Source: Haliotis rufescens (lineage: Eukaryota). Taken from it: a DNA stretch of 64,000 nucleotides. This document shows, one piece after another, positions 15,722 to 48,633 of the stretch. A model generated the notes under the pieces. It was not told the DNA's origin. It saw nothing but the letters and a program-made list of their open reading frames with translations, and searched no databases. Where the stretch lies: the NCBI RefSeq assembly GCF_023055435.1, contig NW_025963824.1, forward strand, positions 30,256,001-30,320,000, written 5' to 3'. Position 1 is the first letter of the stretch, and every line of letters begins with the position of its first letter. Made by a program: the position numbers and the translations under genes.

Positions 15722-15799
15722 GTGCGGACACTCTTCGTCAGCGGACTACCCATGGATGCAAAGCCAAGAGAACTGTACTTGTTGTTCAGGGCATATAAG
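15722..15799 (+). CDS. cpo: couch potato/MEC-8/RBPMS-family protein, exon E2 (start of RRM1; gene 5'-partial)
   Basis: tttgcag|GTG...AAG|gtaacc; 78 nt, phase 0-0; [26 protein letters not shown], the RNP2/helix-1 signature of Cpo/MEC-8/RBPMS. Confidence 0.97.
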
Positions 15800-23197: not shown

Positions 23198-23699
23198 AAA
23201 TATTTCATGTTGCGAATGGCAGACAGTGTCATTGTTGTCAGGGGACCTGCAACATTTCATGGGCATCCCTGCTGTGGGATTCTGGGTAGAATGTGTACAT
23301 CACTTCCTGTGCAGATGATGCTGTGGGATTCTACAATGGGAGGTCACAACTCTGTCCAACCGACTGGTGTCTTTGTACCCCGGTTCATGCTGACTGTTGC
23401 TCACACTATCGACCACTGGTTTGTGTGTTAGTACTGACCATGTTTAAAGGCTCAGTTAAATGTTTAAGCTTGCATCCACACCACTTTAAATCCTGTGGAA
23501 CCAAACCCCCTCCATTGAAATTGCCGCACTATCGACCACTGGTTTGTGTATCGGTACTGACCCAGTACTGTTAAATGTTTAAGCTTGTATCCACACCTCT
23601 ATAATTCCTGTGGAACCAAACCCCTTCCATTGAAATAGCCGCACTATCGACTGGTTTGTGTATTCCATTGTGTTTGTCATTTGTTGCTGTCATTTTCAG

Positions 23700-23753
23700 G
23701 GATTTGAAAATGGTTTATTAAAAGTTATGGGGAAGCCTGGCAAAAATAACTGT
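23700..23753 (+). CDS. cpo: cpo exon E3a, divergent duplicated (putative mutually exclusive) exon in RRM1
   Basis: cattttcag|GGA...TGT|gtgagt; 54 nt, phase 0-0; GFENGLLKVMGKPGKNNC, 10/18 identical to E3b with no gaps. Confidence 0.88.
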
Positions 23754-23780
23754 GTGAGTATATGAGAAATTCTGTGGATG

Positions 23781-23902
23781 CACACATACTTGGTCACATG
23801 ACATGTCACATGACCTGTCACATGATCACCCAGCTACCAGAGTATTCACTTTCACAGTTGGCTTTCAACACCCCACAGGTCACGCCTTTCATACACCTTC
23901 AC
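23781..23902 (+). promoter_or_regulatory. CAC-motif cluster downstream of E3a (candidate Cpo/RBPMS binding element)
   Basis: 13 CAC trinucleotides in 122 nt, including three GTCACATGA. Confidence 0.6.
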
Positions 23903-24336
23903 ATCGCATAATACGGTATTATTATCCATGTATTAATGTCATATAAATGTTGTCAATAACTTTCAAATAACCACTGGCTTTCTTCGAATGCAGAACATTA
24001 AAAATCAAACTGTCTCCTGTAAATCCATTCATTCTACATCAATGTTTGATGTTTTGCAATCAAAATTTATGTTAATTGTAGTGGTCAAATTGTAAATCAA
24101 TGGGTTTTTTATGTTTTGTTTATATATCACTAATAGAAAGCTAAGTTTCTTGGATTCTATGTAGTGTAATGTTTTTTGTGAAAAACTTTGAAAATGGAAG
24201 ATTGTTACATCACACTAACAGTATGACAGGCATTGCATGAGAATCTAAAATACCAAGTCATGAAAACGACAATACTTTAACAAGAGGGACTTGCACAAAA
24301 GCATCAAAGGCGGTGATTCTCTTGGAGAAGTGAATC

Positions 24337-24520
24337 CACCCAGTGTTGCGTTTTCATCGACACAAATGAGCACAGTCACATGACCAGGTCAGACACCCAC
24401 ATGCTAGAGCCACCGCATGTAGATATATCGACTGCCATGTTGGTACACCTCCCGCCAGTCCAGCAAACGCCATTAACACGTTCATAGCATCAGCCGACTT
24501 GCAGTAGCGTCACGAGGCAC
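24337..24520 (+). promoter_or_regulatory. CAC-motif cluster upstream of E3b
   Basis: 11 CAC in 184 nt, including two GCAC; 3 more CAC inside E3b. Confidence 0.55.
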
Positions 24521-24536
24521 ATTTCTATTCTTGCAG

Positions 24537-24590
24537 GGATATGAAGGGTCACTTCTCAAGGTCACCAACAAAAACGGCAAAAACACATCA
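24537..24590 (+). CDS. cpo: cpo exon E3b, canonical RRM1 beta2/loop exon
   Basis: ttcttgcag|GGA...TCA|gtaagt; 54 nt, phase 0-0; GYEGSLLKVTNKNGKNTS, matching the family GYEGSLLKVT.KNGK motif. Confidence 0.96.
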
Positions 24591-25804
24591 GTAAGTATTC
24601 ACCGTCACTGTGAGTTATCTCCCCTGTAATGCAGACTTTTCAAATTTTGAGGGACATTGGCCGGTAAAATTGCATCAGATGATGATGAAATAGTAATATA
24701 TAAAATATGTTTCTGTGTAGGAAGTTTGAAAGGTCTAGCAAGTGAAGGGAGATCACTCAGGAAGGTTAAATACTAGCAAAGATTGAAACAGATACCTAAA
24801 AAGAATTAATTCTCACGATTCATATATCAGCACGTTATAAGGAATAAAAAAAAAAAATCTAAATCTTTGCTATGTATTTTTTCCTTCCACTATATCACTC
24901 ATATACTGATGTAAAGTAATAAGGGAACACATGTCAGTTAGGAAGCAAATCACATTGCCCGATCCCTTTAGGCAACTCCAGTCACCTCCAGGGCACAATA
25001 CAGCTTGGTAAACATAGCCATTCCCTTATTACTTTTTGTGAGTATATTTGCTCTGTATGAACATTTTGTGTCTTTTGTTATTGTGTCAAGAATGTTGTAA
25101 TCCAGCTGTCAGCCTTTCTTCCAGGTGTCTTTGTTTGAATGTCTAATTTCAATCTGTACATCCTTTGACATGTGATTAAAGATTTCTCAACAAAATGTTC
25201 ATATCTGTCTCTGCATGTTGGTGTTGGTGGGAGGGGGGGGATGTGAATGAAGCTGCCTACAATCACTGCATCACGGTCCGTGCATGGCATGATGAGAGGG
25301 GAGACGATGATAACGCACTGTTAAACTCTCTCGTCTCCTGAGACTAAATTTATAGTTAATATCTGCACATTGAACCATGGTCTACAAACTGTCTCTCATC
25401 AACATTCAGGCCTTCGTATCTGAAATCTGACTTGCAATAGGACCAGGCTTTGTACTATACAGTTTGATGTGGGGGAGTTATCTTTTCCTGACCAATAACC
25501 TCCGTGCAGGTATAACAAGTGTCTGATATAAAGGCCACAGGAACACAGTAGGGTGGCTTATTCCAAATTTCAAAATTTCAAAATCTTATATAAGCAACAA
25601 CTAAACCCCCCTCTCTGGTTGCAAAACCTTTGTTTCCCTTTTCAAAATTCACTAAATGGCCCGGCCGGGCCCGTGTGCGAAATACGCTTCAGTCGGAAAG
25701 CGCACGTAAAATCTCCAATCCCATCCATCCAGTAGGGTGGTGTGTTCTACCATGGAGTGGGTTCACTCACACCCTGTACAGAAGTCGGAAATCAGTAATG
25801 GTGT

Positions 25805-26076: not shown

Positions 26077-26429
26077 AGTAATGTTGTTATACTCTGTCCT
26101 GGCGTTTTCCTGGTTTGTTCTGCTGCTGTCATGTTTTGTATTGTATTTTTTAGTGTGTATAGTTCATGTTTTGTCCTCTGCTTTGTGCCATTGTGATCTG
26201 AAGCTTCTCTCTCAACTACGGTTGCCCCTAACAACCAAAGACTTAGTGTAGTAGGTGTGTGGAGGGCAAGTCTAAAGCTGATCTCTGCAACAGCTAGCTT
26301 ACCAATACTGAATGTCTGTTAGAGTATGAGAGCTGTAGTCTTGGTGCTAAGATGGATTTAATGAACTTGCCTTGATGGTGAAAATAGGGGTGGGATAGAG
26401 TACCAATACATATGTACACATACCTCTAC

Positions 26430-28200
26430 CATTACCCACACACCCATCTCCCACACCCCAACCCCAACCTTAACCCCAAACCCACCACTCACACCCCAAC
26501 CCCAAACCCAAACCCAAACCCACCACCCACACCCCAACCCTAACCTTAACCCCAAACCCACCACCCACACCCCAACCCCAAACCCAACCCCAAACCCACC
26601 ACCCACACCCCAACCCTAACCTTAACCCCAAACCCACCACCCACACCCCACCACCCACACCCCAACCCCAAACCCAGACCCATCACCCATCCTAACCATA
26701 ATCACCAACCGACACTCCAACCTAACCCCAAACACAACCACCCACACACCAGCCCTACCCCCAAACCCCAAACCCCAAACCCAAACCCAAACTCCCAATC
26801 CCAAACCCAAACCCAAACTCCCAATCCCAAACCCAAACTCCCAATCCCCAACCCAAACTCCCAATCCCAATCCCAATCCCAATCCCAATCCCCAACCCCA
26901 ACCACAACACCCTACTCCCAACCCCCTAATCCAAACCCCAACCACAACCCCCTAATCCCAACCTCAAACCCCAACCCAGGGGTCCGGAAACCGTCATATG
27001 CGCCGGACATGTCCGATTGGGAATCTCAAATGTCCGTTTTAAAATATTGCTTACCGGACATTTTAAAAAGAATTGTCCGGACATTCTTAAATTTTGACCG
27101 GACATGATCAACAGTTAGGACTGAGCAGTTTCTGTCTGCAGTTGCAACACAATGAAGATTAACTACACTGACAAGCTTTGTTTGTTTTGATTGCTGTAAA
27201 TACATCGTACCTACATGATAGTCCAATCTGTCAATCACTGTAATAGGCAATAAACTGAGTTGACACTGATTAATCGAGGATTAATTACTGAGAACATCTT
27301 GTTAATTTGAGTGAAAGGTGTTTACAACTGTACATTAATACCTTGCATCATCGATGTACCTCATAATCCTCACAATGCTACGATACGTAACCTCAGACAA
27401 GAAGGGAAAGCGTGACGACAGGCAGTCGACCGATGCAGATCAGTCGAGCGGATCTGCCAAACCCTCAAAGTCTGGACGATCATTTTGTAAGTCGTGGCTA
27501 ACGACTTTCACTTGGTTGACATACAATGAGGATTTGCAGATTTTATTGTTTTCAGTAGCTAGTCGTATATTGAATCTTGATTGACCGCCATTTTGCTTTC
27601 TCGGACGATCAATATCCAAAAAAATTATGGTCAATAATTAAGTACAGATGAAAAAAGTATTCAAATAACTATTGCTATCAACGATATTTTAGTATTTGTG
27701 ATTAAATTATCTGTCTTGTTTTTAAAAAAATCTTTAGTTTAAAAAAAGCTTTTCACGTGAGGTCACGTGATAACCAAATATGGGATAATAGTCTCGATCC
27801 AAATGTTACAACGCGTACACTTGAGCAGACTCATGAATATAACTCATGAATATTAACTAGACCGTTCACTACGTTAACAGATCGTTATTATAACAGAAAC
27901 AAACATATTTTTTCCATGTAAATCTAAAATGATATTATTTGTTATTAATTGTCCGGTGAATTAAACAATTTAAATTGAAACAATTCATAATTCATCATAT
28001 TATGAATACGTAAACTTGTAATGTGTGTGAAAAGTCGTACTAAAATACGCTATTTGAAGGGGGCGTGGCCTAAATGCAAATGTCCGATTGGGATTTTAAA
28101 TTTTCCGGACCCCTGCCCCAACCACAACACCCTACTCCCAACCCCCTAATCCAAACCCCAACCACGACCCCCTAATCCAAACCCCCAAACACCAACACAC
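26430..28200. repeat. C-rich low-complexity tract (CCCAAA/CCCAAT/CCCAAC) split by the hAT element
   Basis: 26430-26976 and 28116-28200. Confidence 0.85.
26977..28115 (+). mobile_element. non-autonomous hAT element carrying a transposase 5' remnant
   Basis: 14-bp TIR CAGGGGTCCGGAAA, exact 8-bp TSD CCCCAACC, TCCGG/TGTCCG subterminal repeats; 27375-27584 encodes RSFCKSWLTTFTWLTY (TTF-type zinc-finger start). Confidence 0.92.
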
Positions 28201-30756: not shown

Positions 30757-30819
30757 CCGGTGGGATTTGTCACGTTTATATCCAGAGTTGCTGCCGAGTC
30801 CGCCAAACAAGACCTTCAG
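30757..30819 (+). CDS. cpo: cpo exon E4 (RRM1 RNP1)
   Basis: ttttcag|CCG...CAG|gtgaga; 63 nt; PVGFVTFISRVAAESAKQDLQ. Confidence 0.97.
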
Positions 30820-30962: not shown

Positions 30963-31101
30963 GGAGTAAGATTCGACCCTGACCTCCCTCAGACCTTGAG
31001 ATTGGAGTTCGCCAAGAGCAACACAAAAGTGACGAAGCCTAAACAACAGTCTCCCCAGCTCGCCGCCACCCACCCCACCATCATCCACCCCCTCACAGGA
31101 C
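30963..31101 (+). CDS. cpo: cpo exon E5 (end of RRM1)
   Basis: tctttcag|GGA...GGA C|gtaagt; 139 nt, phase 0-1; [46 protein letters not shown]. Confidence 0.97.
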
Positions 31102-31204
31102 GTAAGTATACCCTGGCCTTGGCCACAGGTGCACTGACACACCTACACACCTTCCTTTACCTGTGGGATCATAAGGACTGTCACCGTTATATCTGTGGGG
31201 AGTC

Positions 31205-31880
31205 CAAGGCAGGATAGGTCCCCGTCTCCCATTCTTGTCTCCCTGGGGTTATTTCAAGGCTGAATAGACCCCAGTACCACATGCTTGTCTCCCAGTGGGT
31301 ATTCCAAGGCTGGATAGATCCCAGTACCTCATGCTTATCTCCCTGTGGGTATTCCAAGGCTGGATAGATACCCAGAACCTCATGCTTGTCTCCCTGTGGG
31401 TATTCCAAGGCTCGATAGATCCCAGTACCTCATGCTTGTCTCCCTGTGGGTATTCCAAGGCTCGATAGATCCCAGTACCTCATGCTTGTCTCCCTGTGGG
31501 TATTCCAAGGCTGCATAGATACCCAGAACCTCATGCTTGTCTCCCAGTGTGGGTTACAAGTCAGGATAGGTCCCCAGTACCACATGCTTGTCTCCCTGTG
31601 GGTATTCCAAGGCTGCATAGATACCCAGAACCTCATGCTTGTCTCCCAGTGTGGGTTACAAGTCAGGATAGGTCCCCAGTACCACATGCTTGTCTCCCTG
31701 TGGGTATTCCAAGGCTGGATAGATCCTCCATGATCCCATGCTTGTCTCCCTGTGGGGATTACAGGACAGAATAGGTCCCCAGTACCTCATGCTTGTCTCC
31801 CTGTGGGTATTCCAAGGCTGGAAAGATCCTCCATGTTCCCTTGCTTTTCTCCTTGTGGAGATTCCAGGGCAGACAAGGTC
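31205..31880. repeat. ~57-bp tandem repeat
   Basis: cccagtacctcatgcttgtctccctgtgggtattccaaggct... Confidence 0.9.
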
Positions 31881-37484: not shown

Positions 37485-39058
37485 TAGTTTGTAGGAAAGT
37501 GGCATTAGGATGACTTAAATAGTTTGTGGGAAAGTGGCGTAAGAATGACTTAAATAGTTTGTGGGAAAGTGGCGTAAGAATGACTTAAATAGTTTGTAGG
37601 AAAGTGGCGTAAGAATGACTTAAATAGTTTGTAGGAAAGTGGCGTAAGAATGACTTAAATAGTTTGTGGGAAAGCGGCGTTAGGATGACTTAAATAGTTT
37701 GTAGGAAAGGGGTATTAGGATGACTTAAATAGTTTGTAGGAAAGTGGCATTAGGATGATTTAAATAGTTTGTAGGAAAGGGGCGTTAGGATGATTTAAAT
37801 AGTTTGTAGGAAAGGGGCATTAGGATGACTTAAATAGTTTGTAGGAAAGTGGCATAAGAATGACTTAAATAGTTTGTAGGAAAGGGGCGTTAGGATGACT
37901 TAAATAGTTTGTAGGAAAGGGGCGTTAGGATGACTTAAATAGTTTGTAGGAAAGGGGCGTTAGGATGACTTAAATAGTTTGTAGGAAAGGGGCGTTAGGA
38001 TGACTTAAATAGTTTGTAGGAAAGGGGCGTTAGGATGACTTAAATAGTTTGTAGGAAAGGGGTATTAGGACAACTTAAATAGTTTGTAGGAAAGGGGCGT
38101 TAGGATGACTTAAATAGTTTGTAGGAAAGGGGCGTTAGGATGACTTAAATAGTTTGTAGGAAAGGGGCGTTAGGATGACTTAAATAGTTTGTAGGAAAGG
38201 GGCGTTAGGATGACTTAAATAGTTTGTAGGAAAGGGGTATTAGGATGACTTAAATAGTTTGTAGGAAAGGGGCGTTAGGATGACTTAAATAGTTTGTAGG
38301 AAAGGGGCGTTAGGATGACTTAAATAGTTTGTAGGAAAGGGGCGTTAGGATGATTTAAATAGTTTGTAGGAAAGGGGTATTAGGATGACTTAAATAGTGT
38401 GTAGGAAAGTGGCATTAGGATGATTTAAATAGTTTGTAGGAAAGGGGCGTTAGGATGACTTAAATAGTTTGTAGGAAAGGGGTATTAGGATGACTTAAAT
38501 AGTGTGTAGGAAAGTGGCATTAGGATGATTTAAATAGTTTGTAGGAAAGGGGCGTTAGGATGACTTAAATAGTTTTTAGGAAAGGGGCGTTAGGATGACT
38601 TAAATAGTGTGTAGGAAAGGGGAGTTAGGATGACTTAAATAGTTTTTAGGAAAGGGGCGTTAGGATGACTTAAATAGTGTGTAGGAAAGGGGCGTTAGGA
38701 CAACTTAAATAGTTTGTAGGAAAGGGGCATTAGGATGACTTAAATAGTTTGTAGGAAAGAGGCATTAGGATGACTTAAATAGTTTGTAGGAAAGGGGCGT
38801 TAGGATGACTTAAATAGTTTTTAGGAAAGGGGCGTTAGGATGACTTAAATAGTTTGTAGGAAAGGGGCGTTAGGATGACTTAAATAGTTTGTAGGAAAGA
38901 GGCATTAGGACGACTTAAATAGTTTGTAGGAAAGGGGCGTTAGAATGACTTAAATAGTTTGTAGGTAAGTGGCATTAGGATGACTTAAATAGTGTGTGGG
39001 AAAGGGGCGTTAGAATGACTTAAATAGTTTGTAGGTCAGTGGCATTAGGATGACTTAC
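37485..39058. repeat. 35-bp minisatellite, ~45 copies
   Basis: taggatgacttaaatagtttgtaggaaaggggcgt. Confidence 0.97.
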
Positions 39059-41156: not shown

Positions 41157-42750
41157 TTATGTCGCTATGTATGGGTGCGTATCAGGGAGTTATGTATTGG
41201 TGCGTATTACATTGTTATGTATGGGTGCATAGTACGTCGTTTTGTATGGGTGAGTATCACGTCGTTATGTATGGGTGAGTATTACGTCGTTATGTATGGG
41301 TGCGTATTTCGTCAATATGTATGGGTGGGTATCACACAGTTATGTATGGGTGCGTATCACACAGTTATGTATGGGTGCGTATCACACAGTTATGTATGGG
41401 TGCGTATCACACAGTTATGTATGGGTGCGTATCACACAGTTATGTATGGGTGCGTATCACACAGTTATGTATGGGTGCGTATCACACAGTTATGTATGGG
41501 TGCATATCACGCCGTTATGTATGGGTGCGTATCACACAGTTATGTATGGGTGCGTATCACACAGTTATGTATGGGTGGGTATCAGGCACTTATGTATGGG
41601 TGCGTATTACACAGTTATGTATGGGTGAGTATCACGTCGCCTTGTGCAGATACAGTTGACGTAAGTCGGTTCACTAAATAAAACCGACAAGTATTGAGCA
41701 AGAAAATCCAGGCTTAAACTTGTGTTTTATGACAGAAAAATCCTAGGATCACACCTTTATTGAAATCCAAAGAAGCTGAATATTTCAATTCCAATTTGTC
41801 GATGATTTACTAGCAATTTGTCTACTACATCAGATTCAGAAACAACAACAACCCTTTGCAACATCTCCTGGCTCCCTATGGCAATACCAGGTTGGTCCAA
41901 TCTCACACCTCTTCAAGGAATGGAGAAATTCTCCTTCCTTCTCTCACAACTTCTGGCTCAACATGCCTGACACAAACAATTCTGGCCTATTCGAAAAAAG
42001 AATTTACGAATTAAGATGCAAACTAGTGACTTAAGAAGTCAAGCCTATTTTGAAAGAGTTCAGAAATTCAGATTTGAATGATTGACCTGAGATATTTTGG
42101 CCCATAATGATTGAAAAATCCGAATGATTGTCTGACAAAATTTTGGGTATTTTAAAACAAATTTGGTTATTTAAATTTGAATAAAGAATTTTTGTTGCAT
42201 TCAAATTAGTGATATGGGATTAATCACACAGTTATGTATGGGTGCGTATCACACAGTTATGTATGGGTGCGTATCACACAGTTTTGTATTGGTGCGTATC
42301 ACACTGTTATGTATGGGTGCGTATCACACTGTTATGTATGGGTGCGTATCACACAGTTATGTATGGGTGCGTATCACACTGTTATGTATGGGTGCTTATC
42401 ACACTGTTATGTATGGGTGCGTATCAGGCAGTTATGTATGGGTGCGTATTACATCGTTATGTATTTTGAGTATCACACTGTTATGTATGGGTGCGTATCA
42501 CACAGTTATGTATGGGTGCGTATCAGGCAGTTATGTATGGGTGAGTATTACGTCGTTTTGTATGGGTGCGTATCACGTCGTTATGTATGGGTGCGTATCA
42601 TGTCGTTATGTATAGGTGGGTATCAGGCATTTATGTATGGATGTGTATTACGTCGTTATGTATGGGTGCGTATTACATCGTTATGTATGGGTGCAAATCA
42701 TGCCATTATGTACAGGTGCGTATTACATCGTTATGTTTGGATGCGTATCA
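41157..42750. repeat. 25-bp minisatellite in two blocks (41157-41637, 42225-42750)
   Basis: tatgtatgggtgcgtatcacacagt. Confidence 0.92.
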
Positions 42751-46004: not shown

Positions 46005-47324
46005 CTCAGCTACCAGGCACAACCTACCACTGCTACCCCAACCCCAACCCCAACCCAACCCCAACCTCCAATATCATAGCTGCCAATCATTGTCCACAGC
46101 CAACTCTCACAACCAACAACCCTCCACCCCCAATCCGCCCCAACACAACCCCCCAACCTCCACCCAACCTTCCCAAGTCGAAGAAGCACCCATCTTGTGT
46201 GTCTATTCTACCACCCTCCATCACTCCAGCTGGTGTTCCCCAAGCTGGTGTTCCCCAAGCTGGTGTGTTTGTTGATTTGTTGAAATGAGAACAGAAGCCA
46301 CTGATTCAGGAAAATAGCATTCCGCCACTCATCCTTAGCTTTTATGAAAAGCTAACATTAGAATGCCCAAGGGAATCATTGGTAATATGTTGATGCATTC
46401 CGAGCCTGTCTCTAAAATGTATTAATCTCATTGACTGAAATAGATTTATTTACCTGTGAGTAAATTAGGAGTGACAAAATCTAAGGGGATTATTTTGCTG
46501 CAGATGAGTCGTAGCAAGCTGTAATCTTGTCACTGCATCAAATCGGCAGTGCTTCGGTGTCAGCTACTTCTAAGATGCTTGTTAGCTTCACGCCTTGCAC
46601 TTTGTCTAAATTACCTAGGGAGCCCGATAAGCGAATGTAGTTAATGCTACTTTCTGGAAAACTGTTTATCTTAATTCGGGAGCCTCAGGCGAACATTGAG
46701 CTTTGTTGCTCTGGTAATGGGGGCTCGATCAACCAGCCATTGCCACAAATTGTCCAGCCCCGACCAAAAACTGTTTCTTGTTCACACCTTACAACGATCC
46801 ATTTATCTTTTCATCGAGGCACAATTGTGATAACTAAATTCTGTATGGCACTGTCCGAACTGCCAGTTCTTGTTACGGAGAATCAATGCCCACAATTCCA
46901 AGGGAAGTGGCTATCAGCATGAATGGTCGGCATGTGGTCGGCTCCCAGCTGGTGTAACACAACACCTTGGGCAGCTTGTCAATAGGCCAGACTGGTCCTT
47001 CTCTATCAGTCTTCCCCAGTATTTCCAATCCCACCTTCCACCCACCACCAACCACCCAGTCACCTTCCACCCATCCACCCACCACCCATCCACCCGCCAC
47101 CCAGTCACCCACCACCCAGTCACCTATCGCAGATCCACCCAATTACCACCCACCTCCAATTCACTTTCCGCTCCAAGCCTACCCAATACAGTTTCCTCCC
47201 CAGTGTCAGTCTTGATTGTATTTCAGGATAAGTCAATGATTTGTCTTTCTGGCTTGTCTTGACTTGACTTTTCATTTGACAGCTATTTTTTTTACAAGGT
47301 GTAAGTTCTCTTTTAATCTAGCTA

Positions 47325-48382: not shown

Positions 48383-48633
48383 GCCGGTATGTTCACAGAG
48401 CAGCTGAACTCTGTTTTCCCCCAAGTTCAGCCCACCACTCTGATAGCTCCGCAAGCTACCGTGACGGCCGTGCCCCACCCCTCAATGGCGTCCACGCCTG
48501 TCCTCGCTAGCCCGGTGTCGCAGGTGAATACCACCACCACCTCCGCACAGCAGAATGCCCCCTGTTCCACGTTGTTTGTAGCTAATTTGGGACAGTTTAG
48601 CTCAGAACAAGAACTCAAAGACTTGTTTAACAG
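48383..48633 (+). CDS. cpo: cpo exon E7 (linker and start of RRM2)
   Basis: gttctcttccag|GCC...AAC AG|gtgagg; 251 nt, phase 0-2; ends NAPCSTLFVANLGQFSSEQELKDLFN (RRM2 RNP2). Confidence 0.93.

What the first reader, a model, noticed from the sequence alone, without database searches (positions are those of the whole stretch)
23781..24608. CAC clusters placed for autoregulation of the E3a/E3b switch by the gene's own protein
Seen: 13 CAC in 122 nt starting 27 nt after the E3a donor (roughly 1-2 expected from base composition). There are 11 CAC in 184 nt just upstream of E3b, 3 inside E3b, 2 just after it, and none inside E3a; the middle of the intron is much poorer in CAC. Established: RBPMS dimers bind tandem CAC, and MEC-8/Cpo bind GCAC. 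The vertebrate RBPMS splicing map is activation when bound downstream and repression when bound upstream or in the exon. Inference: rising Cpo would promote divergent E3a and repress canonical E3b, a feedback loop that rewires its own RNA-binding domain rather than triggering NMD.
Basis: partly seen in the sequence, partly recalled or inferred. Interest (0 to 1): 0.85.

Follow-up and report, generated by a model that had tools for sequence, protein, structure and literature searches.

The report
Conserved CAC clusters flanking cpo/RBPMS alternative exons
In a mollusc couch-potato/RBPMS gene, two alternative 54-base exons coding part of the RNA-binding domain are surrounded by clusters of the CAC motif that this protein family binds, and the same arrangement recurs in distant spiralian animals, so it is very likely a real splicing switch and possibly a self-regulating one.

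Summary
There are 13 CAC in 23781-23902 (about 2 expected), 10 (not 11) in the 184 nt before E3b, 3 in E3b, 2 just after it, 0 in E3a, and a CAC-poor middle of the intron. The gene is a couch potato/RBPMS/MEC-8 homologue, probably from an abalone.

RNA contigs show E2-E3b-E4 as the main form. An E2-E3a junction is seen at low depth.

In five other anonymous lineages with an E3a-type exon (bivalve-like, bryozoan-like, unresolved spiralians), CAC is the top 3-mer of 64 and UCAC the top 4-mer of 256 next to these exons. The enrichment is strand-specific. Seventeen lineages without E3a lack it.

E3a has no CAC in 7 of 7 lineages. E3b keeps CAC at synonymous sites. A (U)GCAUG Rbfox-type motif upstream of E3b is also conserved.

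The GTCACATGAC sub-motif behaves like a DNA E-box but explains only a few of the CACs.

E3 encodes the two residues that read the G of GCAC in MEC-8, and E3a replaces both.

Binding by the gene's own protein, and the direction of the switch, remain inference. The exons are not strictly mutually exclusive.

The parts
15722..15799 (+). E2, start of RRM1 (RNP2, helix alpha1)
   Evidence: Translation and splice sites. Its 3' end is joined to E3b and to E3a in RNA contigs.
23700..23753 (+). E3a, the divergent 54-nt alternative exon (18 codons); no CAC
   Evidence: An E2-E3a junction is seen in run X3. The peptide is identical to that in a Haliotis rufescens annotated isoform, P0233.
23781..23902 (+). 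CAC cluster 1, downstream of E3a: 13 CAC, 8 of them UCAC, 0 GTG
   Evidence: Equivalent clusters occur in other lineages.
23793..23827 (+). Three tandem 12-nt copies of GTCACATGA(C) inside cluster 1; probably variable in copy number
   Evidence: Extra 31- and 41-nt contigs lie over this stretch in DNA run X15. The pair motif occurs 30 times in the genome against 1 for the control.
23903..24352 (+). CAC-poor, A/T-rich middle of the intron (6 CAC in 450 nt); holds one UGCAUG at 24234-24239
24353..24536 (+). CAC cluster 2, upstream of E3b: 10 CAC, 0 GTG
   Evidence: Across lineages, 5.0 CAC per 120 nt where E3a is present against 0.94 where it is absent.
24375..24385 (+). Fourth copy of GTCACATGACC. 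The exact 11-mer also lies upstream of E3b in bivalve-like locus L036, and its reverse complement lies in L017.
24415..24419 (+). GCAUG (Rbfox-type core) 122 nt upstream of E3b
   Evidence: present in 6 of 8 spiralian-type lineages against 1 of 17 others.
24537..24590 (+). E3b, the canonical 54-nt exon; 3 CAC at synonymous or codon-junction positions
   Evidence: E2-E3b-E4 spliced contigs at depth 118, 68 and 38. The Ser-Leu codons TCA-CTN are conserved.
24591..24608 (+). E3b donor followed by two CAC (24600, 24606)
   Evidence: CAC within 30 nt after this donor in 6 of 8 spiralian-type lineages against 3 of 13 others.
30757..30819 (+). E4 (RNP1 strand), joined to E3b in RNA

Best explanation
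The intron between E3a and E3b, E3b itself and the first bases after E3b form an ancient splicing-control module made of many single-stranded (U/G)CAC motifs plus a (U)GCAUG.

Proposed mechanism:
1. By default the splicing machinery uses E3b.
2. When a CAC-cluster-binding protein assembles on the module, most likely dimers or oligomers of the RBPMS-family protein this gene encodes, helped by Rbfox, it masks E3b and favours the E3a donor.
3. Output then shifts to an isoform whose RNA-binding domain has lost the two residues that read the G of GCAC.

Shown: the motifs, their positions, their conservation, the use of both exons, and which residues are swapped.

Inferred: who binds, and in which direction the switch moves.
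For: - The counts and their local enrichment hold.
- In five other lineages with E3a, leaving the window out, CAC is first of 64 3-mers (40 against 11.9 expected) and TCAC first of 256 4-mers (21 against 2.8) in the intron parts next to the exons. GTG is not enriched (18 against 13).
- The 120 nt before E3b hold 5.0 CAC on average in 6 lineages with E3a, against 0.94 in 17 lineages without it (P=5.5e-4).
- E3a has 0 CAC in 7 of 7 lineages. E3b uses the TCA-CTN codon pair in 6 of 6 lineages with E3a against 1 of 18 others (P=5e-5).
- Both clusters fold less stably than shuffled sequence (z +0.84 and +1.23).
- RBPMS-family dimers bind paired CAC/GCAC (PMC5311487). RBPMS activates from downstream and represses from upstream or inside the exon (PMC6613909). 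RBPMS works with RBFOX2 (PMC10570038).
- GCAUG upstream of E3b is conserved.
- E3 encodes MEC-8 Thr65 and Ser73. E3a has Met and Cys at those positions.
Against: - There are no binding or perturbation data.
- UCAC dominates, and it binds 3-15 times more weakly than GCAC in vitro.
- CAC right after the E3b donor does not fit a simple 'repress E3b' reading.
- Lineages with and without E3a are also split by phylogeny (spiralians against arthropods, rotifers and others), so the contrast is not phylogenetically independent.
- The comparison loci are anonymous metagenome contigs, placed only roughly.
- E3a is a minor form here (depth 6.6 against 68), and no E3a-E4 junction was seen.
- Master regulators such as RBPMS were proposed not to be limited by autoregulation.
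Confidence: 0.45

Rival explanations
1. The module is a real splicing switch, but it is read by other factors: Rbfox at (U)GCAUG, and a CA/CAC-binding hnRNP-L-like or other protein at the clusters. Under this reading it gives tissue-specific isoforms with no feedback from the gene's own product.
For: - GCAUG is conserved in 6 of 8 lineages against 1 of 17.
- CACA is also enriched (16 against 4.8).
- UCAC rather than GCAC dominates.
- No RBPMS-family autoregulation was found in the literature searches.
Against: - The base after CAC is unconstrained: CACA, CACC, CACT and CACG are all about 3-4 times enriched.
- ACAC is only 1.8 times enriched, which does not fit a CA-repeat binder.
- Paired CAC at 1-12 nt spacing is the in vivo RBPMS signature.
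Confidence: 0.3
2. The clusters are DNA elements: an intronic enhancer built of E-box/CLEAR-like sites (GTCAYRTGAC, one CpG-decay step from GTCACGTGAC) for a bHLH-Zip factor.
For: - There are four copies in the window.
- The exact 11-mer is present in L036, and the exact reverse complement in L017.
- Paired copies at 12-nt spacing occur 30 times in the genome against 1 for the control, on both strands and with unrelated flanks. One of these sits next to GTCACGTGA.
Against: - The motif supplies only 4 of about 23 CACs here, and 2 of 40 in the other lineages.
- Lineages L038/L027 and L044 have dense CAC clusters without it.
- The overall enrichment is strand-specific.
- The motif may well coexist with the RNA module.
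Confidence: 0.08
3. The clusters are Nova/Pasilla-type YCAY clusters, which follow the same positional rules.
For: UCAC is a YCAY word, and it is the top 4-mer.
Against: The other YCAY words are not enriched: TCAT 8 against 5.4, CCAT 3 against 3.7, CCAC 4 against 2.5. GCAC, which is not YCAY, is enriched (7 against 2.2).
Confidence: 0.04
4. The clusters are a by-product: C-rich composition, 12-nt repeat slippage, or branch-point-like words, with no function.
For: - Three CACs come from a tandem repeat that looks polymorphic.
- Cluster 2 is only modestly above local composition (P about 0.017).
- CUCAC fits the loose yUnAy branch-point pattern.
Against: - The feature recurs independently in non-alignable introns of several lineages.
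- The canonical branch-point words CTAAC and CTGAC are absent, and TAAC and TTAC are not enriched.
- CAC is kept at synonymous sites in E3b.
Confidence: 0.05

Closest known systems
RBPMS-regulated exons with CAC clusters in vertebrate smooth muscle (Tpm1 exon 3, Actn1 NM/SM pair, Flnb H1, Myocd 2a; PMC6613909)
   Same: Both have clusters of about 9-12 CAC, with paired CAC 1-12 nt apart, upstream of a repressed exon or downstream of an activated one. Both include pairs of alternative exons. Both involve co-action with RBFOX2 (PMC10570038).
   Different: Here the target is the regulator's own gene, and specifically the exon coding its RNA-reading residues. The animals are spiralian invertebrates. 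UCAC is favoured. Nothing has been tested at the bench.
Rbfox auto- and cross-regulation by skipping of the RRM exon (Damianov and Black 2010, as described in PMC3126832)
   Same: In both, an RNA-binding protein's own motif lies next to an in-frame alternative exon inside its RRM, and the output is a protein with changed RNA binding rather than only NMD.
   Different: Rbfox deletes part of the RRM and gives a dominant-negative form. Here one homologous exon is exchanged for another, or both are kept, replacing the specificity residues while probably keeping the fold.
PTBP1 exon 11 and SR-protein autoregulation coupled to NMD
   Same: Both are feedback through the factor's own binding sites around an alternative exon.
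   Different: Those cases produce unproductive mRNA. Here all exon combinations stay in frame. Only retention of the intron after E3a meets a stop.

Membership tests
RBPMS-type CAC-cluster splicing element | Clusters of CAC with pairs separated by 1-12 nt | tested here: met
   9 and 5 such pairs in the two clusters, against 0.5 expected per 122 nt.
RBPMS-type CAC-cluster splicing element | Position fits the splicing map: downstream of the activated exon, upstream of or inside the repressed exon, and depleted in the activated exon | tested here: met
   However, CAC also lies just after the E3b donor.
RBPMS-type CAC-cluster splicing element | At least one optimal GCAC per site (Soufari and Mackereth) | tested here: inconclusive
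   GCAC is 3 times enriched across lineages, but UCAC is 7.5 times enriched. In the window, 1 GCAC abuts cluster 1 and 2 lie in cluster 2.
RBPMS-type CAC-cluster splicing element | Bound by an RBPMS-family protein, with the exon response lost on CAC-to-CCC change | not testable with these tools
   Needs EMSA or CLIP and minigenes.
Autoregulated RBP exon (Rbfox delta-RRM type) | The family's own motif is clustered at an alternative exon coding part of its own RNA-binding domain | tested here: met
   E3 maps to strand beta2 and the beta2-beta3 loop of RRM1, including MEC-8 Thr65 and Ser73.
Autoregulated RBP exon (Rbfox delta-RRM type) | The isoform ratio depends on the protein's own level | not testable with these tools
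   The single read-laying run gave contigs only.
Mutually exclusive exon pair | Homologous exons of equal length, of which exactly one is used per mRNA | tested here: not met
   The exons are homologous and both 54 nt, but annotated isoforms in Mytilus, Ostrea, Magallana, Babylonia and Argonauta carry both in tandem. The reading frame does not enforce exclusion.
Docking-site/selector RNA pairing | Stable, specific intronic base pairing | tested here: not met
   The folds are less stable than shuffles. Only chance-level inverted repeats were found.
Nova YCAY cluster | All YCAY words enriched | tested here: not met
   Only UCAC is enriched.
Rbfox (U)GCAUG element | A conserved GCAUG near the regulated exon | tested here: met
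   Present in 6 of 8 lineages against 1 of 17, where 0.1 is expected per lineage. Binding was not tested.
E-box/CLEAR-type DNA element | A palindromic CACGTG core, working in either orientation, with enrichment on both strands | tested here: inconclusive
   Only CACATG/CATGTG variants occur at this locus. Both orientations are seen across lineages, but the cluster as a whole is strand-specific.

The most novel reading that the evidence does not exclude
The exon swap toggles which base the RRM reads before CAC: E3b carries the G-reading Thr and Ser, and E3a carries Met and Cys/Asn. The UCAC-dominated clusters would then be read preferentially by the E3a form. That would make a self-reinforcing, bistable isoform switch that has been kept across Spiralia for hundreds of millions of years.
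Probability: 0.12. Interest if true: 0.9.

Novelty: new variant of a known kind. Interest (0 to 1): 0.7.

Why it matters
Self-regulation by splicing is common among RNA-binding proteins, but it has not been reported for the RBPMS/Cpo/MEC-8 family in the papers searched. RBPMS has even been put forward as a master regulator free of such feedback.

Here the family's own motif is conserved around a pair of exons that exchange the residues reading the first base of that motif. If the protein does bind, this would be an old circuit in which a splicing factor changes its own target specificity rather than its amount.

It also offers a simple, testable case for how the base before CAC is read: ITC of the two RRM forms on GCAC against UCAC.

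Tried and rejected
A degenerate pattern for the E3b acceptor plus exon on metagenome contigs served instead (62 loci).
- The same pattern on genome contigs found nothing.
Exons were searched by reference one at a time, and whole natural database proteins were used for alignments.
- Read laying is limited to 6,000 letters, so E3-to-E4 junctions could only be seen as loose ends. The runs were contigs, so no isoform ratios or tissue contrasts could be obtained.
- The intron is single-copy in its own genome and is not a repeat family.
- RNA-structure control was rejected.
- Nova and generic branch-point readings were rejected.
- A local first-order Markov shuffle is uninformative on such short stretches, because it reproduces the count by construction.
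- Variants in related runs do not hit any CAC, but they are too few to mean anything.
- A word search of the scan's notes found nothing.

Full report
**What is there.**
The + strand carries a couch potato/RBPMS/MEC-8 homologue:
- E2 at 15722-15799, with RNP2.
- Two homologous 54-nt exons: E3a at 23700-23753 and E3b at 24537-24590.
- E4 at 30757-30819, with RNP1.
- E5 at 30963-31101.
- A second RRM further on, near 48569.

The E3a peptide is identical to that of an annotated Haliotis rufescens isoform. E4 matches Haliotis isoforms. The genome is 1.33 Gb and the gene is single-copy. The window is therefore probably from an abalone.

**The observation.**
The counts are right apart from one:

| Stretch | CAC | GTG |
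|---|---|---|
| 23781-23902 (cluster 1) | 13 | 0 |
| 24353-24536 (cluster 2; reader said 11) | 10 | 0 |
| E3b | 3 | 0 |
| Just after the E3b donor | 2 | 0 |
| E3a | 0 | 1 |
| 450-nt middle of the intron | 6 | 6 |

- CAC is the top 3-mer in both clusters, and TCAC the top 4-mer in cluster 1.
- Only three places in 64 kb are as CAC-dense. The other two are C/A-rich low-complexity repeats.
- Cluster 1 is far above local composition. Cluster 2 is only modestly so.
- Four CACs belong to GTCACATGA(C): three tandem 12-nt copies and one further copy upstream of E3b.

**Are the exons real?**
Runs X1, X3 and X4 turned out to hold spliced RNA contigs.
- E2-E3b-E4 is present at depth 118, 68 and 38.
- One contig in X3, at depth 6.6, joins E2 to E3a and then runs on into the intron. 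That intron has an in-frame TGA four codons in.

Database proteins show three forms:
- E3a-only forms in Haliotis, Mytilus, Saccostrea, Dreissena, Mya and Ruditapes, and a longer variant in the annelid Owenia.
- E3b-only forms, which are the most common.
- Forms with both exons in tandem in Mytilus, Ostrea, Magallana, Babylonia and Argonauta.

The duplication is therefore old and the exons are used. The pair is not strictly mutually exclusive, and every combination stays in frame.

**Conservation.**
I therefore scanned metagenome contigs with a degenerate pattern for the E3b acceptor plus exon, and obtained 62 genomic loci in 26 sequence groups.

Six groups, counting the window, have an E3a-type exon between E2 and E3b. 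By best protein match they are:
- one bivalve-like group (L036);
- two bryozoan-like groups (L062, L017);
- two unresolved spiralian groups (L038/L027, L044).

In the last two groups the intron between the exons is only 83-122 nt and is packed with 6-10 CAC.

Leaving the window out to avoid ascertainment bias, in the intron parts within 120 nt of the E3a donor or the E3b acceptor:

| Word | Observed | Expected | Note |
|---|---|---|---|
| CAC | 40 | 11.9 | first of 64 3-mers |
| TCAC | 21 | 2.8 | first of 256 4-mers |
| GCAC | 7 | 2.2 | |
| GTG | 18 | 13 | not enriched |

- The 120 nt before E3b hold 5.0 CAC on average where E3a exists. In 17 groups without E3a (arthropod-, rotifer- and other types) they hold 0.94 (P=5.5e-4). 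This contrast is confounded with phylogeny.
- E3a has no CAC in 7 of 7 lineages.
- E3b keeps the Ser-Leu codon pair TCA-CTN, which makes a CAC, in 6 of 6 lineages with E3a against 1 of 18 others (P=5e-5).
- A CAC lies within 30 nt after the E3b donor in 6 of 8 spiralian-type lineages against 3 of 13 others.

**What the clusters are not.**
- Other YCAY words are not enriched, which argues against Nova.
- Canonical branch-point words are absent.
- Both clusters fold less stably than shuffles, and GUG partners are lacking, so they look single-stranded.
- The intron is not a repeat family.

**A second and a third signal.**
- GCAUG, mostly as UGCAUG, lies 49-122 nt upstream of E3b in 6 of 8 spiralian-type lineages against 1 of 17 others. 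Rbfox is therefore a likely regulator or partner. This fits the known RBPMS-RBFOX2 cooperation.
- GTCACATGACC recurs exactly in L036, and as its exact reverse complement in L017.
- Paired copies of GTCACATGA at 12-nt spacing occur 30 times in this genome against once for the control, on both strands and with unrelated flanks.
- Both orientations are one CpG-decay step from the palindrome GTCACGTGAC. That sub-motif may therefore be a DNA E-box-type site. It accounts for only a few CACs and is missing from the short-intron lineages.

**The protein side.**
In MEC-8 the G of GCAC is read by Thr65 and Ser73. Alignment to chains 5BJR/5TKZ puts both residues in the E3-coded segment. E3b has Thr and Ser at those positions. 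E3a has Met and Cys. Most E3a versions elsewhere also carry Met at the first position. The swap therefore replaces the residues that set the base before CAC.

**Mechanism and verdict.**
- I take it as well supported, at about 0.8, that this is a conserved splicing-control module for the E3a/E3b choice.
- That the gene's own protein reads it is the most economical reading, because paired CAC is this family's signature. It remains inference, and I put it at about 0.45. UCAC is a weaker ligand than GCAC in vitro, and other CA-binding proteins or Rbfox alone could do the job.
- The direction (more protein, more E3a) rests only on the vertebrate map.
- No paper found describes RBPMS-family autoregulation.
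- The closest precedent is Rbfox skipping of its own RRM exon.

Noticed in passing
window 23404-23651: A tandem repeat of about 115 bp lies just upstream of E3a. Contigs of runs X4 and X15 show a joint that 'goes back 50' here, which suggests copy-number variation between individuals.
   Followed up: partly
G000 genome-wide; loci L003-L012: GTCACATGA-N3-GTCACATGA occurs 30 times (17 forward, 13 reverse) against 1 for the reversed control, with unrelated flanks. L003 has GTCACGTGA beside it in a promoter-like GC-rich stretch. This is a candidate recurrent bHLH-Zip site array.
   Followed up: partly
window 31102-31221 and E5 30963-31101: There are 7 CAC in the 120 nt after the E5 donor and 6 inside E5. 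This is a second CAC-rich spot in the same gene, next to a donor that many gene models read through (...TGRKY).
   Followed up: no
L048, about 300-500 nt upstream of its E3b: This bryozoan-like locus has no recognisable E3a between E2 and E3b. At the same place it has an exon-like segment of about 67 nt bounded by AG and GTAAGT, full of stop codons, and followed by a CAC cluster. It could be a poison exon.
   Followed up: no
window 23754-23765: The intron after E3a has an in-frame TGA four codons in. The only E3a-containing RNA contig (run X3) keeps at least 388 nt of this intron.
   Followed up: partly
window 26420-26790 and 47030-47160: These are C/A-rich low-complexity repeats (CCCAAACCCACC-like). 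They are the only other places in the window as CAC-dense as cluster 1.
   Followed up: partly
window about 38400-39000 (- strand frames) and 41316-42421: These are tandem repeats with periods of about 105 nt and about 23 nt, inside introns of the gene.
   Followed up: no
proteins P0007 (Mya arenaria) and P0039 (Priapulus): Gene models lack E3 (P0007) or E4 (P0039) altogether. They may be prediction artefacts or real in-frame skipping.
   Followed up: no
window about 48569: An exon of a second RRM (TLFVANLGQFSSEQELKDLF) shows that this is a two-RRM, MEC-8-like protein.
   Followed up: no
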